A DNA stretch of 64,000 nucleotides, taken from the IMG/VR virus record IMGVR_UViG_3300047321_000238, positions 62,001 through 126,000 of that record. One strand, 5' to 3'. Under the pieces are notes generated by a model. The model was given only the letters and a program-made list of their open reading frames with translations, ran no database searches and was not told where the DNA came from. The stretch's first letter is position 1. Each line of letters begins with the position of its first letter. A program made the position numbers and the translations under genes. Below, one piece after another: positions 32,186 through 54,575 of the stretch.

Positions 32186-32608
32186 ATGAATTTAGAATGT
32201 AGTTCTAAGGGTGATACTGATTATTCCGCTCTATTTGCAAAAGTAGACGGGGTATCCATTGAACATAGATATCAGTTATCTAAACGATTTCTATTTAATC
32301 AATGCATAGTTCACCCTGAGACATATAAACAAGCAAAGTATTGGCAAAGAAGAAATGAGTACTTCTTATTAGATTTTGTAGTAGACTCACATATATACTC
32401 ATTAGAATACCTTAGTATGTTTTATAACAGTCTATGGTATAAATACTTAATCAAGAATTCTAAGCTTATAAAGAACTTAGAGAAGTATGACACATTCACT
32501 GACTGCTTTAAAAACAGTAACACAATCAATAGTCAATGTGATATAATTGCTTTAGTAGCAAACAAAGGCATTGATGAATTAAAAAGACAAAGTGGAATAT
32601 TTATATAA
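32186..32608 (+). CDS. hypothetical phage protein
   Basis: LECSSKGD motif. Confidence 0.7.
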   Translation: MNLECSSKGDTDYSALFAKVDGVSIEHRYQLSKRFLFNQCIVHPETYKQAKYWQRRNEYFLLDFVVDSHIYSLEYLSMFYNSLWYKYLIKNSKLIKNLEKYDTFTDCFKNSNTINSQCDIIALVANKGIDELKRQSGIFI

Positions 32609-36093: not shown

Positions 36094-37524
36094 ATGTTAA
36101 AAGATATTAGAAAAAATCCAATTAAGTTAACTGATTGCTATAACTTATCACATGAGGAATTAAAATGTAATACAGACTTTGAAGTTTCTCATATGTATAA
36201 TAGAGCAGACGGAATGTTATTATATGGCTTTAAAGAAATTGCATTAGGTATTCTTAGTATAAAGATTACAGAAGAAATGGTTGAAGATGCAGCAGTTGAT
36301 GCTGAAGAATTAAACTTAACTTTCCCTAAAGATTTATGGATGAGAGTAGTTACAGAATGTAGAGGATATGTTCCATTAGAAGTTCAATCAGTTCCAGAAG
36401 GAACATGGTGCCCTAAAGGAACTCCATTTGCTCAAGTAAGAAATACCGTAGAAGGTTTCGGAGAAATGGTTACATGGTTTGAAGGCGTGTTTATGATGGC
36501 GTATTTCCCATCTACATGTGCAACTAGAGCATTTGAAATGAGAAACTATTTAGAAGAAAAGAAAGAACAATACGGATACGATGATAGCTTTCTATGGAGA
36601 TTTCATAGTTTTGGATTCAGAGGACATAAAAGCTTGGAAGATGCGTACTTCGCAGGAACTGCATGGTCAACATTCTTATTAGGAACAGATGATTTCCATA
36701 TAAGACAACACATGTCAGAAGATACTGTTATGGGAAGTATTGCAGCGTTAGCTCATAAAGTTACGCAACAATATGATAATGAATATGATTGTTTCATTCG
36801 TTCAATAGATTATGCAGCTGCAAGCGGTAAGAATATCGTAGCTTTAGTTATAGATACTTACAATGCATATAGAGTTATTCAAGAATATGTGTTAAAATTA
36901 GCTGAGTATGCTAAAGGAAAAGGAGTTCATATTGTATTTAGACCAGATAGTGGAGACATTTTTGGACAAGCAATGGCTATATATACAAGAGTTTCAACTG
37001 CAGGTTATAAAAATGTAAGTGTAATAATTGGAGAAGGTATGAGTTTTAATAATGCTAAATCAATGGATAAAAAATTTGAGTTAATGGGAGTGCCATTAAC
37101 ATTTATTGCTTATGGTATAGGAGCAGGATTCTATAAAGATATAGAAAGAGATACTTTAGGATGGGCAATGAAGACTGGTTATTCTAATGGAGCTCCAAGA
37201 ATGAAAGTAGTTAAGTCGGATCCATTTAAGCAATCAATACCTGGGATTGTAGATTTAATGTACGATGAAGATGATTTAATGACAGTATATATAGAAAAAG
37301 AAGATAATGCTGCTGATTCAATATATGAATGTATATATAGATATGATCTTGATCAAAATACAACACCTTCTATGAAAGACTTATCTTATATTCCTGCACA
37401 AGCTATTAAGGATAGAGCATACAATACTACAGGATATAGAGTTGGAGAAAAAATACAAGAAAGAATAATCATATCTAATGAAATTAAAGAACTTATAAAT
37501 GTAATAACAAAAAAATATGAATAA
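36094..37524 (+). CDS. nadV: nicotinamide phosphoribosyltransferase (NAMPT/NadV)
   Basis: TDCYNLSH, FHSFGFRG, GTD, AHKV, VIDTY, RPDSG, GEG, GIGAG. Confidence 0.85.
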   Translation: MLKDIRKNPIKLTDCYNLSHEELKCNTDFEVSHMYNRADGMLLYGFKEIALGILSIKITEEMVEDAAVDAEELNLTFPKDLWMRVVTECRGYVPLEVQSVPEGTWCPKGTPFAQVRNTVEGFGEMVTWFEGVFMMAYFPSTCATRAFEMRNYLEEKKEQYGYDDSFLWRFHSFGFRGHKSLEDAYFAGTAWSTFLLGTDDFHIRQHMSEDTVMGSIAALAHKVTQQYDNEYDCFIRSIDYAAASGKNIVALVIDTYNAYRVIQEYVLKLAEYAKGKGVHIVFRPDSGDIFGQAMAIYTRVSTAGYKNVSVIIGEGMSFNNAKSMDKKFELMGVPLTFIAYGIGAGFYKDIERDTLGWAMKTGYSNGAPRMKVVKSDPFKQSIPGIVDLMYDEDDLMTVYIEKEDNAADSIYECIYRYDLDQNTTPSMKDLSYIPAQAIKDRAYNTTGYRVGEKIQERIIISNEIKELINVITKKYE

Positions 37525-38245
37525 AACAGGAGATAAAACAATGGACATATATTTAATCTGTGAAAATAACAAAGACGTTGAAGATTACTTAACGGTTGGT
37601 AAAGAATATAAAGTAATAAGCATGTTTCCTAAAACTGGACTAATTCTAGTAAAAAGCGATACAGGATTAGTTGAACATGTAAAAGAAAGTAGATTCAAAG
37701 TAAGAAAGGATGATAGTATGAAAACATGTTATAAACCATTTATTATCGAGATAAACGTAGAAGGTAAAGAAGCTTCAGGACATATATCATATGTAGATGA
37801 AAATTTACCAACAATGGATTCAATGAATGAATTCTTAAATATACCATCACCATTTGGAATAGATTTAAAATTAACAAAAACAGGTAGAGGTACTAGAGTA
37901 TTCTTCTTTGATAAAGATGGATCAGATAAAGCTTTAGCTAACAATATGGAAGCTTTAGAGTTTGCTTATTTAATTAAGAAGACAATAGTATTGTATAATA
38001 TATTGCTACAAAACAAAGAATATGTAGTAAAGACAGTTTATGATGTACAATTTCAACCTGAAGGAAAACTATATACATTCAGAAGTACTGATAGCCCAAT
38101 AATTGGACAACTTGTAGTATGCAATAGTTGTAATGGTAAAGATTATGGTATGGTAGTAGCAATTAAAGAAGAATCAGAACATGAATATAATTCAAGAGCA
38201 TATTGTACAACATCTAATATTCTGTCACGAAGAGCACCATTTTAA
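37517..38245 (+). CDS. multi-domain hypothetical protein
   Basis: Coupled to NAMPT. Confidence 0.75.
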   Translation: MNKTGDKTMDIYLICENNKDVEDYLTVGKEYKVISMFPKTGLILVKSDTGLVEHVKESRFKVRKDDSMKTCYKPFIIEINVEGKEASGHISYVDENLPTMDSMNEFLNIPSPFGIDLKLTKTGRGTRVFFFDKDGSDKALANNMEALEFAYLIKKTIVLYNILLQNKEYVVKTVYDVQFQPEGKLYTFRSTDSPIIGQLVVCNSCNGKDYGMVVAIKEESEHEYNSRAYCTTSNILSRRAPF

Positions 38246-38257
38246 TTTAAATAGAAT

Positions 38258-38287
38258 AGCTGGAGACTTAAAACCTCTGGCTTTTTT
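38258..38287 (+). terminator. Rho-independent terminator
   Basis: AGCTGGAG/CTCTGGCT followed by T run. Confidence 0.65.
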
Positions 38288-38321
38288 ATAAAATAAATAG
38301 ATGAATAGGAGTGAATGTAAA

Positions 38322-38624
38322 ATGAATAAAAAGAAAAAATTTAGAGAAAACATAATAGTAAGAGCACAGGATTGTGGCAAACATATAACAGAGACAGGCG
38401 ATACTTTAAGAACAACAGCGAAATTATTTGGTTGTTCAAAATCAACAGTACACAAAGACATAAATGATAGATTATTATTCATCAATAAAAGATTGTATAA
38501 TAAAGCTAGAAAGGTACTAGAAAAGAATTTAGCTGAGAGAAATTTAAGAGGAGGATTAGCTACTAAGAATAAATATGCTAATTCAGGCAAAGACAATAAC
38601 ATATTAGATAAAAGCAAAAGCTAA
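38322..38624 (+). CDS. spoIIID: SpoIIID-like sporulation transcription regulator
   Basis: TLRTTAKLFGCSKSTVHKDI.DRL...L.KN..ER..RGG.AT..KY. Confidence 0.9.
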   Translation: MNKKKKFRENIIVRAQDCGKHITETGDTLRTTAKLFGCSKSTVHKDINDRLLFINKRLYNKARKVLEKNLAERNLRGGLATKNKYANSGKDNNILDKSKS

Positions 38625-38950
38625 TGGAACTATTGGCATACGTAAGGAAAATTTGGTTAAGAAAACATTCTAAAGGAAAGTGGGAGACTAAAGATGGATC
38701 AGAACAGTATGTTGAAGAACTTACTGATGACCATCTAATGAGGATCCCACATTTCATTTGGAAACAATATCGTAGCTATTCAAAAACAATGATTTCAGAT
38801 GTGATCAAAGAAGAAATAGAAGAAAGAAATATGTATATTGACTATGATAACGAATGTAAAGTAAGACGTAATCATCCAGCTCTTAAAGCAATTTCCTCTA
38901 AATCTAATGTCGCTAAAAAGAAAACACATAATAAAATATTTTATAAATAA
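38624..38950 (+). CDS. hypothetical protein with tag-like start (MELLAYVR)
   Basis: TAATG overlap with spoIIID. Confidence 0.75.
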   Translation: MELLAYVRKIWLRKHSKGKWETKDGSEQYVEELTDDHLMRIPHFIWKQYRSYSKTMISDVIKEEIEERNMYIDYDNECKVRRNHPALKAISSKSNVAKKKTHNKIFYK

Positions 38951-38971
38951 GAAATTAAATGAGGAAGCAAT

Positions 38972-39520
38972 ATGACAAAAGAAGAGTTTAAAGCGATGAT
39001 AATAGAAAACTATATAAAAGGGAAAAAAATAGTTTTTGTTAACATTGGAACAGAAAAATATATAGGAGATAGTTTTGCACCATTATTAGGTTCTATGCTA
39101 CAATGTAAACTAGATATTATTAAGATATATGGAACATTAGATGAAACAATTAATGGCAGAAACATGATAGAAGAATTAGAACATATTAATAAGAAATATA
39201 AGAATGATTTTATAATAGGAGTTGACGCAGCGTTTTCTGATGATTACGATAATTGTAATGAAGATTTTATAATACGTAAAGAATCTTTTAAGCCAGGCGA
39301 AGGAGTTGGTAAAAACCATCTACCACACATTGGAAATGCATGTATTAAATTTTGTATCAGAAATGACGAAGAAGATCATTTTGATTCATTAAAAAAACCA
39401 AACATCAAAGAAATATATAATAGAACAAAGAAAGCAGCAGACTTCATATTTGAAATAGATGAAGAACTAAAAGCGTTGGAGGTGCAATATGAAGACAGAG
39501 ATAGTCATTACACTGAGTAA
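38972..39520 (+). CDS. yyaC: spore protease YyaC-like protein
   Basis: IGTEKYIGDSFAPLLG, YGTLD, IIGVDAA, PGEGVGK.LP.IG. Confidence 0.85.
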   Translation: MTKEEFKAMIIENYIKGKKIVFVNIGTEKYIGDSFAPLLGSMLQCKLDIIKIYGTLDETINGRNMIEELEHINKKYKNDFIIGVDAAFSDDYDNCNEDFIIRKESFKPGEGVGKNHLPHIGNACIKFCIRNDEEDHFDSLKKPNIKEIYNRTKKAADFIFEIDEELKALEVQYEDRDSHYTE

Positions 39521-39692
39521 AGATGAATATGATCAAAAAATAGCAGAGCTTGAAGCATTAATAGCTGATCTTGATGTGCAGTATAATTTTATATTAAATC
39601 ACACAAACGATAGTGAAATCATACATGCTTTAATAAATATCAAGAAGGCTTTTATTAAGATGCGTGAAGAATTAATTATTTATGAAATTTAA
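39489..39692 (+). CDS. hypothetical protein
   Basis: GGAGGTG SD. Confidence 0.7.
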   Translation: MKTEIVITLSKDEYDQKIAELEALIADLDVQYNFILNHTNDSEIIHALINIKKAFIKMREELIIYEI

Positions 39693-40059
39693 AGTAATAG
39701 TAGCTGGAGGTAGACTTTTTGATGACTATGAGCTATTAAAAGAATGTTTGGACATGTTACTTACTTTATACGTAATGTACGGGTATGAAATAGTTATAGT
39801 ATCTGGCACAGCAAAAGGTGCAGATACACTAGGTGAAAGATATGCTAAAGAAAGAGGCTACGAAATTATACGAATGCCTGCAGACTGGAGTATCGGTAAA
39901 AGTGCTGGTTATAGACGCAATGCGGATATGGCTGACATAGCTGATGCTTCAGTTTGTTTTTGGTCAGGTTCTAAAGGAACGGGCCATATGATAGATTTAT
40001 CAAAAAGTAAAGGATTAGATTATAGAATAATAGAGTACGAGGAGGAAGAGTATGAATAG
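39682..40059 (+). CDS. SLOG superfamily (YspA/DUF2493-like) protein
   Basis: VAGGR.F.DY, SGTAKGADTLGERYA, FWSGSKGT.HMI. Confidence 0.85.
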   Translation: MKFKVIVAGGRLFDDYELLKECLDMLLTLYVMYGYEIVIVSGTAKGADTLGERYAKERGYEIIRMPADWSIGKSAGYRRNADMADIADASVCFWSGSKGTGHMIDLSKSKGLDYRIIEYEEEEYE

Positions 40060-40270
40060 CATGGATATATATAGCGAAGAAGGAACTAAAGTAAGATTTA
40101 GAAATAAAGGTGGATATGATAGTGAACCAAAAAATGCAGTTAAAGCAAGATTAGTTGAAGGAGAAATATATACTGTAAATTTTACTAATGTTGGTGGTTG
40201 GTCAAGTGACGTTATATTAAAAGAATTTCCAGGTAGAAGATTTAATACTGTAATGTTTGAGGAGGTATAA
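40052..40270 (+). CDS. hypothetical phage protein
   Basis: GAGGAGG SD. Confidence 0.7.
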   Translation: MNSMDIYSEEGTKVRFRNKGGYDSEPKNAVKARLVEGEIYTVNFTNVGGWSSDVILKEFPGRRFNTVMFEEV

Positions 40271-40271
40271 T

Positions 40272-40562
40272 ATGCAATATGAATTATCTGATGAAGAAAA
40301 ACTAGAAGTAGTAAAAAAAAGATTAAATGCTCTTAATTTAAATGTAACCAGAAGTGGATCTAATTTAACTTTATTTAACATGGACAATGGAGAAATCAAT
40401 CTAAGTATCTTTGATGAAGTAAACGATAGAGCTTATGCTATGTCATTAAATGATGAAGCTTTAGATGAAATGTATAAATATTTAAAACAAAGACATGAAT
40501 TAAAAAAAGAATTAGATTACTTAGAAAAACCTAGAGTAACAAGAAAAAGAGGACCTTTTTAA
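40272..40562 (+). CDS. hypothetical protein
   Basis: GAGGAGG SD; start re-assigned. Confidence 0.7.
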   Translation: MQYELSDEEKLEVVKKRLNALNLNVTRSGSNLTLFNMDNGEINLSIFDEVNDRAYAMSLNDEALDEMYKYLKQRHELKKELDYLEKPRVTRKRGPF

Positions 40563-40573
40563 ATAAAATAATT

Positions 40574-41056
40574 ATGGGGGAAAATAAAATGAATCACTTG
40601 ATTGTATATTTAGATGAAAACAAAAATATGATAAATGAGATACATGATAGTGCAGCAATAAGCCTATCAATAATACACGCAAATCTAATAGCATATAGGA
40701 ATAATAGACAAGTCTTAAATGTTAAGATGTTTAATGCAAAAGAACTTATACTTAAAGCAATTAAAGAAGAAAAAATAGATACTGTAATAAACACGATTAT
40801 AGCGTATAATGAAGATAATAAGTATATATTAAACAAGGTAGCAGATTTAGCTGTTAATGATGGAATAATATTTAAACAAGAAGAATTCGAAAATAGCGTG
40901 ATACAATTTTTAGAACTTGATGAGTATCTTATAGCTTTGTATGGAATATATAATGCGTATGGAATTATTGATTTCAAAAGTATCCATGTTAAGAATAAAA
41001 ATTTAGTAATAATAATGGACAAGGAGATAGATAATGGAGAGAAAAGAGCTGTTTAG
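40574..41056 (+). CDS. hypothetical protein
   Basis: ORF in operon. Confidence 0.7.
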   Translation: MGENKMNHLIVYLDENKNMINEIHDSAAISLSIIHANLIAYRNNRQVLNVKMFNAKELILKAIKEEKIDTVINTIIAYNEDNKYILNKVADLAVNDGIIFKQEEFENSVIQFLELDEYLIALYGIYNAYGIIDFKSIHVKNKNLVIIMDKEIDNGEKRAV

Positions 41057-41795
41057 AGCATTGTTTGGTTCAGATAATTATGATCTTTCAATGAAAGCAA
41101 ATGAAAAGTTAAAGATACCAGCTAGCGATAAAGACTATAAGGTATTCTTAGTGCCATCATTTGATGACCTATATACAAAAAAGGAATATTCTTTTGATGA
41201 AATTACCGAGACTGTAGATCTTGTATATAGTGATATAAGAAAGTTAGAAAGAGTTTCTACAAATCTTAATTGGTTAGAAATATTCTTTAGTAAAGAGATA
41301 ATATATAATCCAACTTTATCTATAAGAGAAAGACAATTATTAAATTTAATATTTAATATGAGACATGATATAGTACGTATGAATTTAGCATATTTCTTTG
41401 ATTCATGTATGGGAATGCATATAGAACGTGTAAAAAGATTACACAAATATTCTGCTTCATGTTTATATATGAAAGACTTATACGGATATAATATCAAAGA
41501 AGCATTACATGCTTATAGGGTGCCAGATACTGCAATTAGATTTGCAGATGGTGGATTTAAAGATTTAGGTGCTGCGTTGAGATATGAAGGTGAATCAAAA
41601 GACTTTATGATGAAGATCAGACACGGAGAGATATCTGAAGAAGTAATGATTAAAACATTAGATGGTATAAAAAATTATGCTAATGAAAAATATCAAGAAG
41701 CATATCATGCATTTGCTAAAAATGAAGAAGTTGAAGTAAAATTAAAAGCAATAATATATGAGTTAGTTAAAATAAATGTAGTTAAGGGGGAATAA
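41034..41795 (+). CDS. predicted nucleotidyltransferase (Pol-beta superfamily)
   Basis: LFGSDNY...SDKDY GS/DxD motif; N.N.LE.FF. Confidence 0.75.
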   Translation: MERKELFRALFGSDNYDLSMKANEKLKIPASDKDYKVFLVPSFDDLYTKKEYSFDEITETVDLVYSDIRKLERVSTNLNWLEIFFSKEIIYNPTLSIRERQLLNLIFNMRHDIVRMNLAYFFDSCMGMHIERVKRLHKYSASCLYMKDLYGYNIKEALHAYRVPDTAIRFADGGFKDLGAALRYEGESKDFMMKIRHGEISEEVMIKTLDGIKNYANEKYQEAYHAFAKNEEVEVKLKAIIYELVKINVVKGE

Positions 41796-41797
41796 CA

Positions 41798-42364
41798 TTG
41801 AGAGAATGTAATATATGCAAAAAGGAATTAAAAGAATCAGAGTACCAATTATGTGAAGGTTGTAAGACTGTTGGCAATGAATTTTTTAAAGTAAAAGGAT
41901 CTGTAAGTAAACCTACAAAGAAATTAAATAGAGAAGAATATTACTTAGGAATAGCTAAAGCTGTTTCAGTAGGTGGTACATGCCTTAGACGTAACTATGG
42001 TGCCATTATAGTAAACAACGATGAGATTATATCTACTGGTTATACAGGAGCTCCTAGAGGTAACGCTAACTGTTGTGACTTAGGAGTTTGTGAAAGGCAA
42101 AGATTAAAGATTGCTCCTGGAGAAAGATATGAATTATGCAAATCAGTTCATGCTGAACAAAATGCAATAATATCAGCATCTAGACAAGAAATGCTTGGAG
42201 CTACATTATATCTATATGGATATGATAAAGAAAAGGATTGTGAAATACTTGTAGCTCAACCGTGTGATTTATGTAGTAGAATGATTATAAATGCTGGAAT
42301 ATCTAAAGTAGTAGCAGCAAATTATATATGGTATCCATCAGCTAATAGAAAGTATATAGAATAG
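41798..42364 (+). CDS. dCMP/cytidine deaminase
   Basis: CLRRNYGA, TGYTG, VHAEQNAI, PCDLC. Confidence 0.9.
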   Translation: MRECNICKKELKESEYQLCEGCKTVGNEFFKVKGSVSKPTKKLNREEYYLGIAKAVSVGGTCLRRNYGAIIVNNDEIISTGYTGAPRGNANCCDLGVCERQRLKIAPGERYELCKSVHAEQNAIISASRQEMLGATLYLYGYDKEKDCEILVAQPCDLCSRMIINAGISKVVAANYIWYPSANRKYIE

Positions 42365-42374
42365 AGGTGATTGC

Positions 42375-42623
42375 ATGGATATAGAAATGAGAAGTCCTTA
42401 TCTTGAAGTAATTGAAATTAAAAGAAAGATTACTGCAGAATTATTTAAAGATTTAAAAGTCGGACATAAAATTAGATTATCTCAAATAATCGAAAAAGGA
42501 AGATCAGGATATGTAGCAAAAATAACAGTTACTAACGATGAAAACGGTAAAAAAATAACTAAAACTATGCATGAATTGTGCAATATTTTAGATAGTTTTA
42601 GATTAGTATCAGTAAATAGATAG
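42375..42623 (+). CDS. hypothetical protein
   Basis: GAGGTG SD. Confidence 0.7.
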   Translation: MDIEMRSPYLEVIEIKRKITAELFKDLKVGHKIRLSQIIEKGRSGYVAKITVTNDENGKKITKTMHELCNILDSFRLVSVNR

Positions 42624-42826
42624 GAGATGTTTATAATGAGTAATAAATTTCAAAGAGCTGTGAGTAAAGAAGTATTAAGAAGAGTGAGTAAAGAACTTGA
42701 TGTTGAAGGTTATGGTGTTAATAAGATTAGATCAATAATTAATCTTGATATTGGAAAAATTCAAAGAGAAGTTCGTAAAGAAATTAGAAAAGGTCCAAGG
42801 TTATAAAATATTAGGGGGAAATAATA

Positions 42827-43120
42827 TTGAACAAATATCAAAATAATATTAAGAAATTAACATTAAAAAAAATGGCAGATATATATAAAAATTTTATTAA
42901 AGAGCATGGAACTTATAGAGAAATGTTAAATAGTGTTACTACTGAAAAAGAATATGTATTTCATATTGATATGAAAAATCCAGTAGTAAGTAAATATTGT
43001 GACGCTGCTGATATTGCATTTAAATCTTTTGAAGTAACAAGAAAAGAAGTTCGTAAAGGTCTAAAAGATAACAAAAAGGCATTAAATTTATTAAAAAAAA
43101 TGGAGCCTGTAAATTATTAA
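42827..43120 (+). CDS. hypothetical protein
   Basis: AGGGGG SD, TTG start. Confidence 0.7.
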   Translation: MNKYQNNIKKLTLKKMADIYKNFIKEHGTYREMLNSVTTEKEYVFHIDMKNPVVSKYCDAADIAFKSFEVTRKEVRKGLKDNKKALNLLKKMEPVNY

Positions 43121-43141
43121 TAAATAAGACATTAGGGGGAA

Positions 43142-43831
43142 ATGATATTGAATAAAATAAATGATTTTTTTAAAGGATGGACAAAGCTAGATTTTGCTTG
43201 GCTATTAATAGCTAATGCAATCATGTTAGGATTATCTATCAGAAATGGTGATACAGTAGTATCTATGATATGTGCTGTAACAGGAATAGTTAGTGTTATA
43301 TTTGCAAGTAAGCAAATGACAGCTAATTATGTAGTAGGACTTATAAATGTAGCGTTATATGCTTATCTTTCATATCAAGCCAAATTATATGGAGATTTTC
43401 AATTAAATGCTTTCTTCTATGTACCAATGCAATTCATAGGATATTATATGTGGAATAAAGCTAAAAACAAATCATCAGAACATAAAGTTGAAGCTAAAAG
43501 ACTAACTGGAGAGCAAGCTATATTTATATCAGTAGGAACAATAGGAACTATATTGGTATACGCTAAAATATTAGATATGCTTAGAGGAAATATAACTTTA
43601 ATCGATTCAGCCTCTACAGTACTATCAGTGATAGCTATGATATTAATGGTTAAACAATATACTGAACAATGGTATATGTGGGTTCTTGTTAATATAGTAT
43701 CTATAGTAATGTGGGTAGTATCTTTATCACAAGGCACAGGAGATTTGGCTACATTATTAATGTGGGTAGTTTTCTTAATTAATTCTATATTTGGATTAGT
43801 TAATTGGAGAAAGGCTAGTAAGAAGGCTTAA
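43142..43831 (+). CDS. pnuC: nicotinamide riboside transporter PnuC
   Basis: LYGD, GYYMW, DSASTVLSVIAMILM, EQWYMWVLVNIVSI. Confidence 0.9.
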   Translation: MILNKINDFFKGWTKLDFAWLLIANAIMLGLSIRNGDTVVSMICAVTGIVSVIFASKQMTANYVVGLINVALYAYLSYQAKLYGDFQLNAFFYVPMQFIGYYMWNKAKNKSSEHKVEAKRLTGEQAIFISVGTIGTILVYAKILDMLRGNITLIDSASTVLSVIAMILMVKQYTEQWYMWVLVNIVSIVMWVVSLSQGTGDLATLLMWVVFLINSIFGLVNWRKASKKA

Positions 43832-43987
43832 ATGATAATTATTAAGATTATAGTAGCTGTCTTTATTGTTTCTTGGATATTAGCTAAGGATTCTGTAGAG
43901 AAATAGGAAGAAGGTTAAATTATGATCAAATTAATAATTGTAATATTTATTGTATTGTATGTAGTAAGTATTATGAATGAATAAGAT

Positions 43988-44012
43988 GGAGCTCTAATAG
44001 GCTCCTACTTTA
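43988..44012 (+). terminator. probable terminator
   Basis: GGAGC/GCTCC followed by TACTTTT. Confidence 0.55.
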
Positions 44013-44475
44013 TATGAGCTATTAATAATATAATGGTTGATATAAAGTATTACGTAATAAAGAAAGGGTGGAGTAATTATGGCATATGAAATTAAGTGTC
44101 TTCATTGTGGACAGGAATATGATGGCCTGGATTATGTTGAAACAGGAGGTATGATATGAATAATAAAAATGAGATATATGTTTGTAATGCTAATTGTCCC
44201 GAATTAGATAGTGATAATAGTAAGCACTGTACCTGTACCGTTAAAAATGAAGAAGATAAGTTTAATATGTTAAATAATGAATGTCCATGTGGAAATAATT
44301 CAAAATGGGCATTAAAAGAAAAGTTACAATAAACATGGAGGAATAAAATTATGAAGCTTGAATTAGCAATATGTAAAGAATGTAAACACAAATCCTTCTG
44401 TAAAAAGAAAAAAGTTCAATGTGAAGAGTATTCAATTTTAATAAGAGCATTAGAAAGCAAATAAGGAGGTTTAAT

Positions 44476-44664
44476 ATGTCAAATAAATTTCAAAGATTAG
44501 CTATTCAAGTGGCTAAAGATGATTCTAAAAAGGAGTATTATATAAATAGAAAGTTTAATATTAGAGAAACTAAGTCTTTAGTATTGGCAGGATTTAGAGA
44601 AGAACTAAGAACATATGAAGATGCAAGAAGATATAAAAATTGGAATAAAAATATAGAATTTTAA
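44476..44664 (+). CDS. hypothetical protein
   Basis: AAGGAGG SD. Confidence 0.7.
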   Translation: MSNKFQRLAIQVAKDDSKKEYYINRKFNIRETKSLVLAGFREELRTYEDARRYKNWNKNIEF

Positions 44665-44675
44665 GGAGGATTAAT

Positions 44676-44942
44676 ATGGACGAAGATAATAGAGTTTATT
44701 ACAAGATTTTTAAGTCTCCAGGGATAAACAATAAATTAACTATTATTACTATGCAATGGTTTGACGAAAATCAATATGAACAAAAGAGATTTTTTAAAGA
44801 TAAGCAAGGAAATCAATTAGAATTCGAAGACAAAGAGAAAGCAGTTGAATGGTTATTAGACAATATTAAAGAAGAACTTATAGATGAAGAGTATCTAAAA
44901 TGCAAAATAATGAAAGACGAAGATTATTTATTAAGTAAATAA
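44676..44942 (+). CDS. hypothetical protein
   Basis: AAGGAGG SD. Confidence 0.7.
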   Translation: MDEDNRVYYKIFKSPGINNKLTIITMQWFDENQYEQKRFFKDKQGNQLEFEDKEKAVEWLLDNIKEELIDEEYLKCKIMKDEDYLLSK

Positions 44943-44969
44943 ATTATATTAAAGATGGGGGAATAAGAA

Positions 44970-45848
44970 ATGAAAGTTCAAAGTTTAAGTATTAGTGTAC
45001 CAGCAAAGTGTACAAATAATTGCTATTTTTGTGTAGCACACATGCACAGGGAGGACTATTGTAATCAAATAGAAAACAATACAAGATTTATCGATTTATA
45101 TACTAAGGATTATAAAAAGAGATTAATGTTTGCAAGAGACAATGGATGCAATACAGTTATGTTAACTGGAAATGGTGAACCATTATTAAATAAAAGATTC
45201 TTAGAAAGATTTGCATTATGGAATGAATCATTGCCAAAGCCTTTTGTATGGATTGAAATTCAAACTTCAGGAACATTGTTAGATGATGAATATCTAAGAT
45301 ACTTAAGAAATACAGTAGGAGTTAATACTATTAGTTTATCATTATCGAATATTTTTGATTCAGATAAAAATGCAGAATATAATAGAACTCAAGCAGGAGT
45401 TAAAATTGATATCGATAAATTATGTGATGAAATAAAGAAATATGATTTCAATTTAAGATTATCACTTAATATGACAGACTATTATAATGACACTGAAATT
45501 AAGAGTATTTTTGAAAGAGCAAAACAATTAGGAGCAGATCAAATCACATTTAGAAAGCTATATACTAGTAGTATAAATGGAGAGAATGAACAAAATAAGT
45601 GGATTGAAAAGCATGCTTGTGCGTCTTCTAAGTATGAAGAATTAACACAGTATGTTAAAAAGAATAGTACACCTTTAGAAGTATTACCTTTTGGAGCAAT
45701 CAAGTATTCATTAGGCTCTTTTGCAGTAGTAGTTGATGATGATTCAATGAGTACTCAAATAAAAGATGATACAGTTAAATATTTAATACTTAGAGAAAAT
45801 TGCAAATTATATTCAAAATGGGAAGATAAAAATTCATTAATATTCTAG
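44970..45848 (+). CDS. radical SAM protein
   Basis: CTNNCYFC (CxxxCxxC), LTGNGEPLL. Confidence 0.9.
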   Translation: MKVQSLSISVPAKCTNNCYFCVAHMHREDYCNQIENNTRFIDLYTKDYKKRLMFARDNGCNTVMLTGNGEPLLNKRFLERFALWNESLPKPFVWIEIQTSGTLLDDEYLRYLRNTVGVNTISLSLSNIFDSDKNAEYNRTQAGVKIDIDKLCDEIKKYDFNLRLSLNMTDYYNDTEIKSIFERAKQLGADQITFRKLYTSSINGENEQNKWIEKHACASSKYEELTQYVKKNSTPLEVLPFGAIKYSLGSFAVVVDDDSMSTQIKDDTVKYLILRENCKLYSKWEDKNSLIF

Positions 45849-45860
45849 GAGGAATAATAA

Positions 45861-46301
45861 ATGAAAAGAGTACAATTTCTAAAAACAGAAGAAGATTTTA
45901 AGACATTAAAAATTGGAGATAATATCTTATTAAAATATAAAGATGGAAAGATATTTATGTTAAAAATAACTAAAATAGAGGAAAATCAATTAATTGTAAA
46001 AGAAGATGTTAGTTTTCTTCAAGAAACATACATAAATATTTCTTCTGTGATTAATAACGGATTAAATAAATATTTAGAATACATCATTGTAGAAAGAAAT
46101 ATAAAAAGTCCATATAGTACTCAACTTGATGGACTTATAAAGAGTATGAAAGAGCTTAGAGTAAGGTTAATGAAAGCTTATTATAGTAAGCAATTTTGTG
46201 ATAATAAAACAATATTACTTGATTTAAAGGCGATGTCAAAAGGAATTGCAACAATGATGAATGATAAGCTATTATATAACATATTAAAAGGAGCTAAATG
46301 A
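45861..46301 (+). CDS. hypothetical protein
   Basis: AGGAGG SD. Confidence 0.7.
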   Translation: MKRVQFLKTEEDFKTLKIGDNILLKYKDGKIFMLKITKIEENQLIVKEDVSFLQETYINISSVINNGLNKYLEYIIVERNIKSPYSTQLDGLIKSMKELRVRLMKAYYSKQFCDNKTILLDLKAMSKGIATMMNDKLLYNILKGAK

Positions 46302-46494
46302 TATGGTAGATAATAAAAAAGATAATGCATTTATTGAAAAAATTGCTAAAGAAATTGATGAAAATAAAATACACATAGGAATTGAAAATATATTAGAACT
46401 AGTTTATGATATGGGAGTTAAAGAAGGAAAAGCATTGGTAGTAAAAAATGCTGTTGAATTCATAAGTAAGTAAATAATCTTGAGGGGGATTAAA

Positions 46495-47553
46495 ATGAAT
46501 AAAATATCAGACATGCCAAAGAAAGGTGTATGGTTTGCTAAAGCATTACCACCACATAGAGGTCATTTAAGTACAATATTACAAGCTGCTACACAAGTAC
46601 AACAATTAGATGTAATTGTATCAGAGCATGAAGAAGGAAATGGTAAACTGTGTAGAAATGTCGGAATACCATATATGCCAGGAGCAAAAAGAGTACAATG
46701 GCTTAGTCAGGAATTAATGGACATGCCTCATATTACCGTTAAGTTACTTAATGAAAATAATATGCCTGTATATCCTAATGGATGGGATATGTGGACTCAA
46801 GAATTACAAAAAGTTGCAGGAGAAAAAATAGATATGTTTTTCTGCGGTAAAAAAGATATAGATGTATATGGACCAAAATTAAAGAGTTATTTTCCAGGAG
46901 TTAAAGTTACAGCGTATGATACAGATACTTGTTACTTTAATATATCAGCTACAGAGATCAGAAGTAATCCAATTAAGCATTGGGACTATATATTAGGACC
47001 AGCAAGACCATTCTTTGCTAAGAAAATATTAATAGCTGGAACTGAAAGCACAGGTAAGACTACTTTAACTAAAACTTTAGCTAAGATGTATCATACATCA
47101 TGGAGTGAAGAAGTAGGAAGATATTATGCAACGCAATATCTAGGAGGTAATGAAAATTACTTTACTGATGAAGACTTTACAAGAATAGCTCATTTGCAAG
47201 TTGAACAAGATCATCAAGCATTAAGAAACTGTAATAGAGTTTGTTTCTTTGATACAGACGCTACAGCAACAGATTACTTCAGTCAATTATATATGGGACA
47301 TAGCAATAGCATAGTTAGAAGCTATATAGATCCTGATAAGTATGACATAGTGTTCATGTTGAAGCCTGATGTTGAATGGGTAGATGATGGCATGAGATTA
47401 AATGGATCACAAGAGCAAAGAATTAAACTTCATAATAAATTAAAAGATATGTATGATAATTTAGGATTTAAAGTAGTTGAAGTAGGTGGAACATACCAAG
47501 AAAGACTTAAATTTATATTATCAAAAATAGATGAAATGATTGGGGGAAAATAA
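46495..47553 (+). CDS. nadR: NadR-like NMN adenylyltransferase / ribosylnicotinamide kinase
   Basis: PPHRGH (HxGH), NISATEIR, GTESTGKTT, FFDTD, WVDDGMR. Confidence 0.9.
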   Translation: MNKISDMPKKGVWFAKALPPHRGHLSTILQAATQVQQLDVIVSEHEEGNGKLCRNVGIPYMPGAKRVQWLSQELMDMPHITVKLLNENNMPVYPNGWDMWTQELQKVAGEKIDMFFCGKKDIDVYGPKLKSYFPGVKVTAYDTDTCYFNISATEIRSNPIKHWDYILGPARPFFAKKILIAGTESTGKTTLTKTLAKMYHTSWSEEVGRYYATQYLGGNENYFTDEDFTRIAHLQVEQDHQALRNCNRVCFFDTDATATDYFSQLYMGHSNSIVRSYIDPDKYDIVFMLKPDVEWVDDGMRLNGSQEQRIKLHNKLKDMYDNLGFKVVEVGGTYQERLKFILSKIDEMIGGK

Positions 47554-48132
47554 ATGAGAAAGCTATTAAGCGTAGATAAACAAACGGATAATAAATTCTT
47601 AAACATGTTTGTAGCAAACTATGAAGAAGACGGTGAAGAGTCTAAATACTTTATTGCATCAAGAAAAAAGAATGCAGAAGATTTAGATTGTATGACTGGT
47701 AAGATGGTAGCTGATGCAGTAATAATCGTTCCTGTATATACTAATGGAGATATATTATTTATTAAGCAATTTAGAAAACCTATAAATGATTATATATATG
47801 AATTTCCAGCAGGATTAATCGATGCAGGTGAAACTAGTAAACAAGCTGCAATAAGAGAGCTTCATGAAGAAACTGGATTAAGTGTAGTAAGTGCTAGAGA
47901 ATTAATCAAGCCTACGTATACATCAGTTGGAATGTCAGATGAAGCTGTAGGAATATATATAGCTGAAGTTCAAGGAGAACTATCTCAAGAATATCAAGAA
48001 AAAAGCGAGGATATAAATTTTGAAATAGTAAAAATAGATGACTTAGCAAAGTTCATTAAAGAAAACAAAGTAGCAATGCAAGCATCAATACTTTCTTTAT
48101 TCTTATATAGCATAGAAAAAGGAGAATATTAA
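47554..48132 (+). CDS. NUDIX hydrolase (ADP-ribose pyrophosphatase-like)
   Basis: KQFR, EFPAGLID.GE....AA.REL.EETG. Confidence 0.9.
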   Translation: MRKLLSVDKQTDNKFLNMFVANYEEDGEESKYFIASRKKNAEDLDCMTGKMVADAVIIVPVYTNGDILFIKQFRKPINDYIYEFPAGLIDAGETSKQAAIRELHEETGLSVVSARELIKPTYTSVGMSDEAVGIYIAEVQGELSQEYQEKSEDINFEIVKIDDLAKFIKENKVAMQASILSLFLYSIEKGEY

Positions 48133-48338
48133 TGGATATAGAAAATATTCCTGATGATATTTTTTATACTGAATATGAGAGAAGAAAATCAGAAAGAAAA
48201 TCAAACCAAGAAGCCAAAGAAAAACAAGAAGAGCGACAAAGAATTAGATGGTTAGAATCTAATGGAGGAACGTGTGGTAATGATCAATGTGCTACATCTT
48301 ATTGTAGAATAAATTGTTATGGTTGTGATGGTTTTTAA
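48132..48338 (+). CDS. hypothetical protein with C-terminal Cys cluster
   Basis: Coupled ORF. Confidence 0.65.
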   Translation: MDIENIPDDIFYTEYERRKSERKSNQEAKEKQEERQRIRWLESNGGTCGNDQCATSYCRINCYGCDGF

Positions 48339-48356
48339 TTTAAGGAGTGATATACA

Positions 48357-48662
48357 ATGTCATCTAATGTAATAAAATTTAATTTAAAAAAAGAAGTAGA
48401 ATTGGATAAAGAATTTCAACCAATAAATGAAGAAAAAATATCTCTTTATGCTAATTGTGATGCAGTATCTTCATGGGTAGCCTATGTTGAAAATTATGAA
48501 CAAGCAAAAGAACTTATTTTACCAGAAAATATAGATGATTTATTTAATAGTTCATTAAGTTGTGATGAATTAGAAATATTTGTTGCAGTTTTAAATAATC
48601 ATTCAGAATATTATTTTTTTAATGAAGTATTTGATTATGAAGATTACAAAAATAAGGAGTGA
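48357..48662 (+). CDS. hypothetical protein
   Basis: AAGGAGTG SD. Confidence 0.7.
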   Translation: MSSNVIKFNLKKEVELDKEFQPINEEKISLYANCDAVSSWVAYVENYEQAKELILPENIDDLFNSSLSCDELEIFVAVLNNHSEYYFFNEVFDYEDYKNKE

Positions 48663-48667
48663 TGTAA

Positions 48668-49120
48668 ATGGAAATAAAAGAAGTGAAAGGCAATTTATTA
48701 GAAGCAAGTGAAGATCTAATATGTCATCAAGTAAACTGCCAAGGTAGAATGGGTAGTGGAGTAGCTTTAGCTATTAAAGAAAAGTATCCACAAGTATATA
48801 AGCAATATAAAACTATGTGTAAATTAACGAATCCTTTAGGAGAAGCACAAGCAATCCAAGTATCAGAAAAACAAATAGTAATTAATATGTATGCACAAGA
48901 ATTCTATGGATATGATAAAAAGCAATATACTAGTTACGAAGCGTTTGAGAAGTGTTGTAAGAAGATTCGAGATATTGCAATTCAATTTAACTTAAGTGTA
49001 GCAATGCCATATAAGATTGGTAGTGTACGCGGAGGAGCTGAATGGGACGAGATATACAAGATATTAGTAAAGTATTTTGGACCACTAAGTAAAGTAAATT
49101 TAACGCTGTATAAATTATAA
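48668..49120 (+). CDS. macro domain (Appr-1-p processing) protein
   Basis: KGNLL, HQVNCQGRMGSGVA, MPYKIGS.RGG..W. Confidence 0.9.
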   Translation: MEIKEVKGNLLEASEDLICHQVNCQGRMGSGVALAIKEKYPQVYKQYKTMCKLTNPLGEAQAIQVSEKQIVINMYAQEFYGYDKKQYTSYEAFEKCCKKIRDIAIQFNLSVAMPYKIGSVRGGAEWDEIYKILVKYFGPLSKVNLTLYKL

Positions 49121-53086: not shown

Positions 53087-53173
53087 GGAAGAGTGGCCGA
53101 GATGGTTGATGGCGGCAGACTGTAAATCTGTTCTGTAAAAAGCACGTTGGTTCGAATCCAACCTTTTCCACCA
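53087..53173 (+). tRNA. tRNA-Tyr(GTA)
   Basis: Cloverleaf, long variable arm, CCA. Confidence 0.95.
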
Positions 53174-53412
53174 AAGTCTAAGGTTAAGATATATTCACTC
53201 AATTGACTTGAATTGAATAAAGTTACACATTAGGTTAGTAATACTTTGATTAAAGATATATTCATCAGAATATTGATAGTCAATTATAACTATACGTAAT
53301 ATGGATGTTTCTGAACTTCAGCCCCTGTGGTACATAAATATGTGAGAAATATCGGAGTATTCTAATTAGGAATATGTGTCTAGTAGTAGGTCGGGACTAG
53401 ACAAAATAATAT

Positions 53413-53488
53413 GGATAGATAGCTCAGATGGTAGAGCAGTGGATTGAAGATCCGCGTGTCCAAGGTTCGATTCCTTGTCTGTCCACCA
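53413..53488 (+). tRNA. tRNA-Phe(GAA)
   Basis: Cloverleaf, 76 nt, CCA. Confidence 0.95.
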
Positions 53489-53557
53489 GTAGGTTTTTGT
53501 TAGCTTTTGCCGTAGAACTCCTAGAGAGAGTCAAATCAAAAACTATCTCCACCATAT

Positions 53558-53634
53558 GGCTCTGTAGCTCAGTTGGAAGAGCATCCGTATTATTAAACGG
53601 AGTGTCGGAGGTTCAATTCCTCCCAAAGTCTCCA
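53558..53634 (+). tRNA. tRNA-like gene with 8-nt anticodon loop ATTATTAA (Asn-like?)
   Basis: D and T arms and CCA intact; TCCGT/ACGGA stem. Confidence 0.7.
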
Positions 53635-53697
53635 TTCATCCTTTTTATATTTTTATATTGTAGATACTCTCTATTATTGGGAGGGTATTTGCAACAT

Positions 53698-53772
53698 GGC
53701 TCATTAGTATAGCGGTTAGTACACTGCCCTGTCACGGCAGAAGCGGGAGTTCGATTCTCCCATAAGTCGCCA
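53698..53772 (+). tRNA. tRNA-Asp(GTC)
   Basis: Cloverleaf, CCA, one acceptor mismatch. Confidence 0.9.
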
Positions 53773-53831
53773 TAGGATTTTCTTTTGTCAGTTTCTTTCT
53801 AGATCAAAAAAGTAAACTGTAAAACCTATAT

Positions 53832-54570: not shown

Positions 54571-54575
54571 TATAT

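What the first reader, a model, noticed from the sequence alone, without database searches (positions are those of the whole stretch)
36094..49120. Unusually complete, dispersed NAD+ rebuilding and ADP-ribose toolkit
Seen: NAMPT, SLOG/YspA, PnuC, NadR (NMNAT + NR kinase), NUDIX and macro domain. Known: phage Nampt+Nmnat (NARP2) restores NAD+ destroyed by Thoeris/SIR2/DSR-type defences, and macro domains can reverse ADP-ribosylation. Here two routes converge on NMN (nicotinamide+PRPP, and imported NR). NUDIX could recycle ADPR to ribose-5-P. Inference: an extended, redundant NAD-defence countermeasure.
Basis: partly seen in the sequence, partly recalled or inferred. Interest (0 to 1): 0.68.

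Follow-up and report, generated by a model that had tools for sequence, protein, structure and literature searches.

The report
Phage NAD salvage and ADP-ribose cluster
A 248-kb soil phage packs into 17 kb the genes to import nicotinamide riboside, recycle nicotinamide and rebuild NAD+, plus four enzymes that handle ADP-ribose. Every piece belongs to a family already described in phages, so this is a well-stocked but ordinary example of a known kit.

Summary
All six named genes are present at the stated coordinates, with intact catalytic motifs. The seven genes cluster far more tightly than chance allows (P about 6e-6).

The kit has four layers:
- A NARP3 core, made of PnuC and an HTH-less NadR. 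The closest solved structure to this NadR is the NARP3 enzyme Bas30_86.
- A divergent NARP2-type Nampt that has no NMNAT of its own and must use NadR.
- An ADP-ribose pyrophosphatase-type Nudix that starts at the base after the NadR stop codon.
- Three ADP-ribose-processing domains: a TARG1/DarG/Poa1p-class macro, the NADAR and a YAcAr SLOG.

"Unusually complete" is overstated. Jumbo phage CBB carries both Nampt+NadM and NadR+PnuC. An uncultured clade of phages of about 250 kb shares the order SLOG, dCMP deaminase, PnuC, NADAR, NadR, Nudix. Nampt, Nudix and macro come and go between relatives.

The kit may therefore serve phage housekeeping as much as counter-defence. It is a new member of a known kind, of modest interest.

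The parts
32186..32608 (+). DarG1/AdfN-like NADAR domain protein (140 aa).
   Evidence: PF22397 2.7e-9, 37.2 bits against a cut-off of 27. All 8 homologs found carry PF22397. E26, Y29, Q30 and K33 are invariant, with the same E-to-K spacing as the mutated residues E36/K43 of AdfN-T4 (PMC11825919). The AF2 model has pLDDT 94.4. Its only significant Foldseek hit is the Geobacter lovleyi NADAR 8bat: E 4.2e-6, TM 0.68.
36094..37524 (+). Divergent nicotinamide phosphoribosyltransferase (Nampt/NadV type, 476 aa).
   Evidence: Family hits. Best PDB hits are NAMPTs. The FGxRG, GTD, AxH, RPDSGD and G[DE]G motifs are kept. The closest phage homologs sit beside NMNAT genes. The score is below the NCBIfam cut-off and identity to those homologs is only about 28%.
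39682..40059 (+). YAcAr (YspA/DUF2493) SLOG domain protein (125 aa).
   Evidence: PF10686 1.5e-16 and phrog_289 3e-30. In L011 the 292-aa gene next to a NADAR gene hits YAcAr and, faintly, Macro; this SLOG matches its C-terminal part at 44%. Homologs are syntenic in L016 and L018 at 45%.
43142..43831 (+). PnuC nicotinamide riboside transporter (229 aa).
   Evidence: PF04973 2.6e-46, TIGR01528 2e-46, 4QTN 1.3e-47. Relatives show 51-73% identity, and there the gene lies next to NadR.
43988..44005 (+). Terminator-like hairpin after PnuC. It is a possible operon boundary between PnuC and NadR.
   Evidence: Consensus scan only; weak evidence.
46480..47553 (+). HTH-less NadR: NMN adenylyltransferase plus NR kinase (357 aa). 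It is the only NMNAT detected in the genome.
   Evidence: TIGR01526 1.8e-78, and PRK08099 matched at positions 57-408 of 411. The best solved structure is 9X6F, which is Bas30_86 of NARP3, at 2.8e-61. K10, E230 and D275 of Bas30_86 correspond to K21, D244 and D289 by my count on the alignment. phmmer found no paralog.
47554..48132 (+). Nudix hydrolase of the ADP-ribose/ADP-sugar pyrophosphatase family (192 aa). It starts at the base after the NadR stop codon.
   Evidence: PF00293 5.8e-17. The best NCBIfam hits are NudE and ADPRase. PDB ADPRases and NUDT5 match at 2e-14. The Nudix box is intact. The reference motif SPGFADE reads SVGMSDE here.
48668..49120 (+). Stand-alone macro domain (150 aa) of the TARG1/DarG/Poa1p class, BT1257-like subfamily.
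   Evidence: PF01661 1.3e-8 and DarG NCBIfam 3.8e-20. The AF2 model has pLDDT 93.6. Top Foldseek hits are DarG 5m3e, BT1257 2fg1, SCO6735, Poa1p and TARG1. The family profile's best PDB hit is BT1257 at 1.6e-17. An invariant Gln77 occupies the position of the DarG/TARG1 catalytic Lys.

Best explanation
The locus is an NAD+ supply and ADP-ribose clean-up kit in the accessory (+ strand) region of a complete 247.9-kb jumbo phage. The phage belongs to the 0305phi8-36/Moorella-phage lineage and probably infects a spore-forming Bacillota host.

The core is a NARP3 module. PnuC lets nicotinamide riboside in. The kinase domain of the HTH-less NadR traps it as NMN, and the NMNAT domain of the same protein makes NAD+ from NMN and ATP.

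A divergent Nampt adds a second NMN source from nicotinamide and host PRPP; the phage has no Prs. Nampt has no NMNAT of its own, so both routes share NadR.

The Nudix starts at the base after the NadR stop codon. It splits ADP-ribose into AMP and ribose-5-phosphate, which removes the other NADase product and feeds host PRPP synthesis.

Macro, NADAR and SLOG act on other ADP-ribose derivatives or adducts.

The net effect is that NAD+ stays available in the infected cell when it is being cleaved. The cleavage may come from host NADase defences (SIR2, TIR, DSR) or from the phage's own LigA and sirtuins.

What is shown here: the family, fold and motif assignments, the clustering and the synteny. 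What is inferred: all enzyme activities, the shared-NadR logic and the physiological role.
For: -
- The closest solved structure to NadR is the experimentally validated NARP3 enzyme Bas30_86. PMC13464706 shows that PnuC+NadR restores NAD+ against Sir2-HerA and DSR1.
- NARP2 (Nampt+Nmnat) is shown to counter Thoeris and DSR in bioRxiv 10.1101/2024.02.11.579819.
- phmmer finds no second NMNAT or Nampt-family paralog, and an HMM search finds no Prs. NadR is therefore the common hub, and NARP1 is excluded.
- The top phage homologs of Nampt lie beside NMNAT genes.
- Clustering: P = 6e-6.
- PnuC and NadR are adjacent in relatives L015 and L017. The order SLOG, dCMP deaminase, PnuC, NADAR, NadR, Nudix is kept in contigs of about 250 kb, L016 and L018.
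- In L011 the NADAR gene is followed by a gene hitting both Macro and YAcAr, which ties the three ADP-ribose domains together.
- A Nampt relative in L002 has a Nudix homolog 1.5 kb downstream.
- Presence and absence of Nampt, Nudix and macro vary among relatives, as expected of arms-race accessory genes.
Against: - No activity or expression was tested. The only sequencing run that holds the DNA is a rhizosphere DNA run.
- Nampt is divergent. It scores 196.6 bits against the PRK09198 cut-off of 405. It is 26-28% identical to NARP2-context Nampts and almost as similar to the FADO Namat (bit scores 112-155 against 96).
- The genes are not one operon. Nampt lies 9 kb from NadR. PnuC and NadR are separated by 2.6 kb, seven ORFs and a terminator-like hairpin.
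- The host is unknown, so nothing shows that it carries NADase defences.
- The phage's own NAD+ consumers (LigA and two SIR2 genes) give a non-defence reason for the same genes. LigA lies next to PnuC-NadR in L019 and next to the NARP2 genes in BcepSauron.
- The macro lacks the DarG/TARG1 Lys, and the SLOG has no known activity.
Confidence: 0.6

Rival explanations
1. The kit is housekeeping only and closes a phage-run NAD+ cycle. LigA turns NAD+ into AMP and NMN, and NadR re-adenylates the NMN. The CobB-type sirtuin(s) turn NAD+ into nicotinamide and O-acyl-ADP-ribose. Nampt recycles the nicotinamide, the macro deacylates O-acyl-ADPR, and the Nudix splits ADPR. PnuC tops up the pool. On this reading there is no selection from host NADase defences.
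For: The genome encodes LigA (NF005932 1.2e-108) and a sirtuin that passes the NCBIfam equivalog cut-off for NAD-dependent protein deacylase (226 bits against 221). It also encodes a second SIR2 gene and a second Nudix in the replication block. LigA lies 1.5 kb upstream of PnuC-NadR in relative L019 and next to the NARP2 genes in BcepSauron. Sir2 and Nudix lie next to Nampt/NadM in CBB. TARG1-class macros are O-acyl-ADPR deacylases, and JGI labels homologs of this macro that way.
Against: Homologous PnuC+NadR and Nampt+Nmnat modules have measured anti-defence phenotypes (PMC13464706; bioRxiv 10.1101/2024.02.11.579819). Here the consumers sit 45-60 kb away from the kit. Nampt, Nudix and macro vary between close relatives, which is unlike core housekeeping genes. 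NADAR and SLOG have no place in this cycle. The two readings are not exclusive.
Confidence: 0.3
2. The three ADP-ribose domains are not part of NAD+ recycling. They are separate counter-defences. NADAR would be an orphan DarG1-like antitoxin (AdfN) that removes ADP-ribose from guanine in phage DNA. Macro and/or SLOG would destroy or sequester ADP-ribose-derived toxins or signals such as ADPR-1''-phosphate from aRES, or gcADPR from Thoeris.
For: NADAR is supported by PF22397, the 8bat fold and the E..K pair. Diverse phage NADARs neutralise DarT1 (PMC11825919). A Poa1p-like phage macro, Adpp, dephosphorylates ADPR-1''P to defeat aRES (bioRxiv 10.64898/2026.01.28.702374), and Poa1p is among the top fold hits of this macro. 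The NADAR/Macro/YAcAr neighbourhood is seen in L011. Iyer et al. (PMC9503650) predict that viral SLOG, Macro and NADAR domains act on soluble ADPr derivatives.
Against: The macro's subfamily (BT1257-like) is uncharacterised, it lacks the DarG Lys, and it is not next to a NARP1 operon; the phage has none. No activity is known for YAcAr. In this phage the three genes are 7-9 kb apart from each other.
Confidence: 0.35
3. The co-location is accidental: unrelated morons that happen to share NAD-related annotations.
For: The genes are interleaved with unrelated genes (SpoIIID, YyaC, dCMP deaminase, radical SAM) and are not one operon.
Against: The permutation P is 6e-6 to 6.6e-5. The same gene set recurs in the same order in independent contigs of about 250 kb. 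NadR and the Nudix abut with no gap.
Confidence: 0.03

Closest known systems
NARP3 (Escherichia phage TrudiRoth Bas30_87 PnuC + Bas30_86 HTH-less NadR; PMC13464706; PDB 9X6F/9X6H)
   Same: It has a PnuC-type NR transporter and a NadR without the HTH domain. Bas30_86 is the best solved match to this NadR (2.8e-61). The mutated residues K10 and D275 are conserved, and E230 is Asp here.
   Different: The two genes are not adjacent here: 2.6 kb lie between them, containing a radical SAM gene and six small ORFs. The host is a Bacillota rather than an enterobacterium. The same NadR must also serve a Nampt. Identity to Bas30_86 is well under 40% by eye on the alignment (not computed).
NARP2 (Vibrio phage KVP40 Nampt NadV + NatV; bioRxiv 10.1101/2024.02.11.579819)
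   Same: It has a Nampt-family enzyme plus an NMNAT and a Nudix ADPRase function. The closest phage Nampt homologs are in NARP2-type contexts.
   Different: There is no NatV/NadM fusion. The NMNAT function is supplied by NadR, and the Nudix is a separate gene that starts right after NadR. Nampt lies 9 kb away and is very divergent.
Jumbo phages Pectobacterium CBB / Cronobacter GAP32
   Same: One genome carries Nampt, an NMNAT, Nudix, NadR, PnuC, Sir2 and dCMP deaminase.
   Different: CBB keeps two complete modules about 200 kb apart and has a NadM-type NMNAT. This phage has a single NMNAT and keeps everything except the sirtuins within 17 kb.
NARP1-AP phosphatase Adpp (Vibrio phage Gary; Poa1p-like macro)
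   Same: It is a stand-alone phage macro of the Poa1p/TARG1/DarG structural class.
   Different: It is not associated with Adps/Namat, which are absent here. Its best profile match is the uncharacterised BT1257, not Poa1p. It was not compared directly with Adpp.
AdfN orphan NADAR antitoxins and DarG1 (PMC11825919)
   Same: It has the NADAR fold, is a member of Pfam PF22397, and keeps the conserved E..K pair.
   Different: It is a short 140-aa form. Sequence similarity to the solved DarG1 NADAR is marginal by phmmer (E 0.46). Its activity is untested.

Membership tests
NARP3 | PnuC-type nicotinamide riboside transporter | tested here: met
   PF04973 2.6e-46, TIGR01528 above its cut-off, and 4QTN at 1.3e-47 over the full length.
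NARP3 | NadR-like enzyme with NMNAT and RNK domains but no HTH | tested here: met
   TIGR01526 1.8e-78. PRK08099 is matched from profile position 57. The HxGH, ISxTxxR and Walker A motifs are present. The best PDB match is Bas30_86.
NARP3 | The two genes form an adjacent two-gene cassette | tested here: not met
   There is a 2.6-kb gap with seven ORFs and a terminator-like hairpin. The genes are adjacent in relatives L015 and L017.
NARP3 | Restores NAD+ and phage growth against Sir2-HerA/DSR1 when NR is available | not testable with these tools
   This needs an experiment.
NARP2 | Nampt that makes NMN from nicotinamide and PRPP (KVP40 NadV clade) | tested here: inconclusive
   The NAMPT family and its motifs are present. 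However, the score is below the NCBIfam cut-off, and the protein is nearly equidistant from NARP2-context Nampts and the FADO Namat.
NARP2 | Partner Nmnat of the NatV/NadM type (NMNAT fused to Nudix), usually nearby | tested here: not met
   The only NMNAT found is NadR, 9 kb away. The Nudix is a separate gene that starts right after NadR.
NARP1 | Adps (PRPP-synthetase-like) next to Namat | tested here: not met
   PF13793 has no match in the complete genome, while all 14 of 14 control genomes match.
ADP-ribose pyrophosphatase (NudF/NUDT5 Nudix subfamily) | Intact Nudix box and the downstream SPG(F/G)xxE-type motif | tested here: inconclusive
   The Nudix box is intact and the best hits are ADPRases. 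The conserved Pro is Val here (SVGMSDE against SPGFADE). All NCBIfam scores are below their cut-offs.
DarG (DarTG2 macro antitoxin) | Macro fold with catalytic Lys (PTKKHW motif), plus a C-terminal DarT-binding domain | tested here: not met
   The fold matches. The Lys position is an invariant Gln. The protein is only 150 aa, with no second domain.
Adpp / Poa1p ADPR-1''-phosphate phosphatase | Poa1p-like macro with the catalytic residues mutated in 6LFS/6LFT (H23, S30) | tested here: inconclusive
   Poa1p is a fold hit (TM 0.79-0.85) and a profile hit at 1.3e-8. S30 is invariant and the H23 position is probably N23, but this was judged by numbering only. No residue-level alignment was obtained.
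NADAR (DarG1/AdfN type) | NADAR fold with the conserved Glu and Lys that contact ADP-ribose | tested here: met
   PF22397 is above its cut-off. The 8bat fold hit has probability 1.00. E26 and K33 are invariant.
SLOG, YAcAr family | Match to PF10686 above its cut-off | tested here: met
   60.4 bits against a cut-off of 28.2. The ligand and activity are unknown.

The most novel reading that the evidence does not exclude
The phage runs a closed, self-owned NAD+ economy. One NadR hub takes NMN from three sources: Nampt, imported NR, and the NMN released by the phage's own LigA. Macro and Nudix convert the O-acyl-ADPR and ADPR made by two phage sirtuins back to ribose-5-phosphate. The kit would then exist first to let the phage deploy NAD+-burning enzymes of its own, possibly sirtuins used as weapons on host proteins. 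Resistance to host NADases would be a by-product. A side possibility is that the YAcAr SLOG is a new sponge or hydrolase for Thoeris-type gcADPR signals.
Probability: 0.25. Interest if true: 0.55.

Novelty: new member of a known kind. Interest (0 to 1): 0.3.

Why it matters
It extends NARP3-type NAD+ rebuilding from enterobacterial phages to an uncultured clade of soil Bacillota jumbo phages of about 250 kb. It gives a natural example in which a Nampt is attached to the NARP3 NadR rather than to its own NMNAT. It also shows, across relatives, that Nampt, Nudix, macro, NADAR and SLOG are gained and lost around a stable PnuC-NadR core.

The co-occurrence with phage-encoded LigA and sirtuins raises a question that can be tested. 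Are NAD+ reconstitution pathways primarily counter-defence, or support for the phage's own NAD+ consumers? None of this would surprise a specialist. All the domain families and their co-occurrence in large phages are already published.

Tried and rejected
- **No close relatives by DNA or pattern search.** Megablast of the 13-kb region against 50,697 phage records found nothing. A pattern search of IMG/VR with NadR found no relative. With Nampt it found one 57% relative on a 42%-complete fragment that lacks NadR and PnuC.
- **Host inference.** A search of bacterial genomes with SpoIIID found nothing.
- **ORF 37517-38245 as a Nampt partner.** This 242-aa ORF overlaps the Nampt stop codon, so I considered it. 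I rejected the idea for three reasons: it has no family hit, the Atlas model is poor, and its homolog sits in relative L013 where Nampt is absent.
- **Radical SAM 44970-45848 and ORF 45861-46301 as NAD-related.** These lie between PnuC and NadR, so I considered them. They belong to a phage-specific rSAM cluster of unknown function. They are absent between PnuC and NadR in relatives. I treat them as an insertion.
- **A KptA/Tpt1 source of ADPR-1''-2'' cyclic phosphate for the macro.** None is present in the genome.
- **Promoter scan.** It was uninformative in this AT-rich DNA, giving fewer hits than shuffled sequence.
- **Logan contigs L011 and L013.** They could not be searched beyond the fetched 20 kb because they are not held.
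- **Closest cultured phages.** MTATph1, WH1, 0305phi8-36 and KLEB27-3 lack NadR, and only KLEB27-3 has a NAPRTase-family gene. The kit is therefore not a core trait of that lineage.
- **Expression.** No RNA run holds the locus, and read laying was not used.

Full report
**Setting**

The window is bases 62001-126000 of a single 247,883-bp IMG/VR virus record. The record has direct terminal repeats and is rated complete. GC content is about 30%.

A simple ORF call gives about 301 genes. There is a large + strand block from about 53 to 185 kb, flanked by - strand blocks that hold the virion genes.

The major head protein and large terminase are closest to Moorella phage MTATph1 (50% and 43% identity). 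The next closest are the Bacillus jumbo phages of the 0305phi8-36 group at 29-40%.

Several features point to a spore-forming, probably anaerobic Bacillota host. This is an inference.
- The phage carries SpoIIID, YyaC/DUF1256 and DUF444 homologs.
- It carries NrdD and NrdG.
- A relative has a choline-binding endolysin.

The only sequencing run that holds the DNA is a rhizosphere metagenome, likely the source sample. No RNA run holds it.

**The observation**

Their family assignments are firm.

*Nampt, 36094-37524.* It hits PF04095, PRK09198 (6e-58) and phrog_448 (1e-59). Its best solved matches are bacterial and human nicotinamide PRTases. The FGxRG, GTD, AxH and RPDSGD motifs are kept. It is divergent: it scores below the NCBIfam cut-off and is 26-28% identical to other phage Nampts.

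*PnuC, 43142-43831.* It matches the N. mucosa PnuC structure over its full length at 1.3e-47.

*NadR, 46480-47553.* It has the NMNAT and NR-kinase domains but no HTH domain. The PPHRGH, ISATEIR and GTESTGKT motifs are readable. Its best solved match, at 2.8e-61, is 9X6F. That entry is Bas30_86, the NARP3 enzyme.

*Nudix, 47554-48132.* It has an intact Nudix box. Its best matches are ADP-ribose/ADP-sugar pyrophosphatases at 2e-14. The conserved Pro after the box is Val here.

*SLOG, 39682-40059.* It is a YAcAr family member.

*Macro, 48668-49120.* It is a stand-alone 150-aa domain.

- PF22397 is above its cut-off.
- E26, Y29, Q30 and K33 are invariant.
- The AF2 model has pLDDT 94.4.
- Its only significant fold hit is the DarG1-type NADAR 8bat.

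In random draws, seven genes fell within a 35-gene span with P = 6e-6 genome-wide. Within the + strand block the figure is 6.6e-5.

**What else the genome holds**

phmmer finds no paralog of any of these genes. HMM searches give the following:
- no PRPP synthetase or Adps;
- no KptA;
- one macro only;
- a second Nudix at 158.7-159.3 kb.

Outside the window, in the replication block, the phage encodes its own NAD+ consumers:
- an NAD-dependent DNA ligase;
- a sirtuin that passes the NCBIfam equivalog cut-off for NAD-dependent protein deacylase;
- a second, weaker SIR2 gene.

So NARP1 is excluded. NadR is the only NMNAT found, and the phage itself spends NAD+.

**Typing the macro**

The AF2 model (pLDDT 93.6) is closest to these structures:
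- DarG macrodomains;
- B. thetaiotaomicron BT1257;
- S. coelicolor SCO6735;
- yeast Poa1p;
- human TARG1.

A profile of 45 homologs scores BT1257 best at 1.6e-17. The family conserves H20, N23, S30, Q77, D83 and G122-G123.

Gln77 sits where DarG and TARG1 have their catalytic Lys. A DarG-type mechanism is therefore unlikely.

Three activities remain open: ADPR-1''P phosphatase (as in Adpp/Poa1p), O-acyl-ADPR deacylase, or another hydrolase. The nearest phage homologs, at 40-50% identity, are in large Bacillus phages such as FADO, the Tsamsa group and PBS1. In FADO the gene lies 25 kb from the NARP1 operon.

**Relatives**

NadR homologs at 57-78% identity lie on Logan/ENA contigs of up to 256 kb. 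Their neighbourhoods are as follows.
- **L015 and L017:** PnuC and NadR are adjacent.
- **L016 and L018** (249.5 and 247.5 kb): the order is macro, SPASM/rSAM, YAcAr-DHH, dCMP deaminase, PnuC, NADAR, NadR, Nudix. No Nampt is seen in the 30 kb examined.
- **L019:** LigA lies 1.5 kb upstream of PnuC-NadR.
- **L013:** it is syntenic with window 20-39.5 kb but has no Nampt.
- **L017:** it lacks the Nudix and macro that follow NadR here.
- **L002:** it has a 57% Nampt with a Nudix homolog 1.5 kb downstream.
- **L011:** a NADAR gene is followed directly by a 292-aa gene that hits YAcAr and, faintly, Macro.

The stable core is therefore PnuC+NadR. Nampt, Nudix, macro, NADAR and SLOG are accessory and mobile around it. 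In this phage a 2.6-kb insertion has split the core. It holds a radical SAM gene and small ORFs, and a terminator-like hairpin follows PnuC.

**Comparison with what is known**

PnuC plus an HTH-less NadR is NARP3, shown to restore NAD+ against Sir2-HerA and DSR1 (PMC13464706). Nampt plus Nmnat is NARP2 (bioRxiv 10.1101/2024.02.11.579819).

Iyer et al. 2022 (PMC9503650) report three relevant points:
- NadV is found in 33% of jumbo phages.
- NadR co-occurs with NadV and NadM.
- Macro, NADAR, SLOG and Nudix co-occur and neighbour one another in large DNA viruses.

Jumbo phage CBB carries NadM-type NMNAT/ADPRase, Nampt, Sir2, Nudix and dCMP deaminase at 53-62 kb. It also carries NadR-PnuC at 263-265 kb. 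Tsamsa-like Bacillus phages and Enterococcus Schiekvirus carry PnuC and NadR close together without Nampt.

Phage NADARs neutralise DarT1 (PMC11825919). A Poa1p-like phage macro defeats aRES (bioRxiv 10.64898/2026.01.28.702374).

What is particular here is modest. Nampt has no NMNAT of its own and must share the NARP3 NadR. The Nudix starts right after NadR, so two genes reproduce the NMNAT+kinase+Nudix domain set. Apart from the second Nudix at about 159 kb, the kit sits within 17 kb in a Bacillota jumbo phage.

**Mechanism and its rivals**

I hold this model at confidence about 0.6.
- NR enters through PnuC.
- The NadR kinase domain traps it as NMN.
- Nampt adds NMN from nicotinamide and host PRPP.
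- NadR adenylates NMN to NAD+.
- The Nudix removes ADP-ribose as AMP and ribose-5-phosphate.
- Macro, NADAR and SLOG deal with other ADP-ribose derivatives or adducts.

The activities are inferred from homology. The anti-defence role is inferred from experiments on homologs.

The main rival is that the kit serves the phage's own LigA and sirtuins. Each of their products (NMN, nicotinamide, O-acyl-ADPR, ADPR) has a matching enzyme in the kit. LigA or Sir2 lie beside NAD salvage genes in L019, BcepSauron and CBB. The two readings are compatible.

A second, partial rival is that NADAR, macro and SLOG are separate counter-defences against DarT, aRES or Thoeris rather than recycling enzymes. Chance co-location is disfavoured by the permutation test and by the conserved synteny.

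**Verdict**

The finding is a new member of a known kind, with interest about 0.3.

Noticed in passing
G000:C1:155782-156504, 163777-164550, 167044-169113 (outside the window; locus L020): The phage encodes two SIR2-family proteins and an NAD-dependent DNA ligase. One SIR2 passes the NCBIfam cut-off for NAD-dependent protein deacylase. They sit in a block with primase, NrdD/NrdG, thymidine kinase, ThyX, a second Nudix (158737-159345) and a SpoT-like HD (p)ppGpp-hydrolase domain protein (163227-163844).
   Followed up: partly
window 19595-20371: A metallo-beta-lactamase-fold protein has a partial, below-cut-off match to the anti-Pycsar nuclease Apyc1 (PF23023, 35 bits against a cut-off of 50; phrog_392 2e-26). 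It may be a cyclic-nucleotide-degrading counter-defence gene.
   Followed up: no
window 20570-28224: The phage encodes ABC transporter parts: a permease (20570-21367), an ATPase (24702-25331) and an NMT1/THI5-like substrate-binding protein fused to an OmpA domain (26656-28224). Relatives L013 and L019 conserve them at 55-69% identity. The substrate is unknown.
   Followed up: partly
window 44970-45848 and 45861-46301: A radical SAM protein with CX3CX2C at residues 14-21 belongs to a phage-specific cluster of unknown function. It is inserted, together with a 146-aa ORF, between PnuC and NadR. The Atlas copy of this protein starts at residue 25, which would remove the cluster-binding motif.
   Followed up: partly
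window 6932-12366: Seven paralogous ORFs of about 105 aa are arranged in a near-tandem series (blastp clustering). No function is known.
   Followed up: no
window 53087-57952: There is a cluster of 16 tRNA genes in a GC-richer stretch. Two of the ARAGORN calls have irregular anticodon loops (a 2-nt and a 4-nt anticodon), and there is a tRNA-Asn(ATT).
   Followed up: no
window 38301-38624, 38972-39520, 13091-13717: Sporulation-type genes occur in a phage: SpoIIID (1e-27), YyaC/DUF1256 (1e-32) and a DUF444 fragment-like protein. This suggests a spore-forming host and possible manipulation of sporulation.
   Followed up: no
window 61156-63873: A papain-family cysteine protease (61156-61875), ClpP (61963-62601) and a ClpX/AAA_2-type ATPase (62617-63873) lie in a row.
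   Followed up: no
L016:10001-11491 and L018:19414-20306+: In relatives of about 250 kb the NadR gene is 496 aa, with an N-terminal extension of about 149 aa and no Pfam hit. The YAcAr SLOG there overlaps a DHH/DHHA1 phosphoesterase gene.
   Followed up: no
L011:3885-8120: A 1411-aa protein with a cellular-type RNA-dependent RNA polymerase domain (PF05183) lies on a 119-kb phage-like contig, 2 kb upstream of the NADAR and Macro/YAcAr genes.
   Followed up: no
window 44156-44332 and 48132-48338: Two small Cys-rich ORFs (58 and 68 aa) lie in the gaps after PnuC and after the Nudix. They may be zinc-binding, and whether they are real genes is unverified.
   Followed up: no
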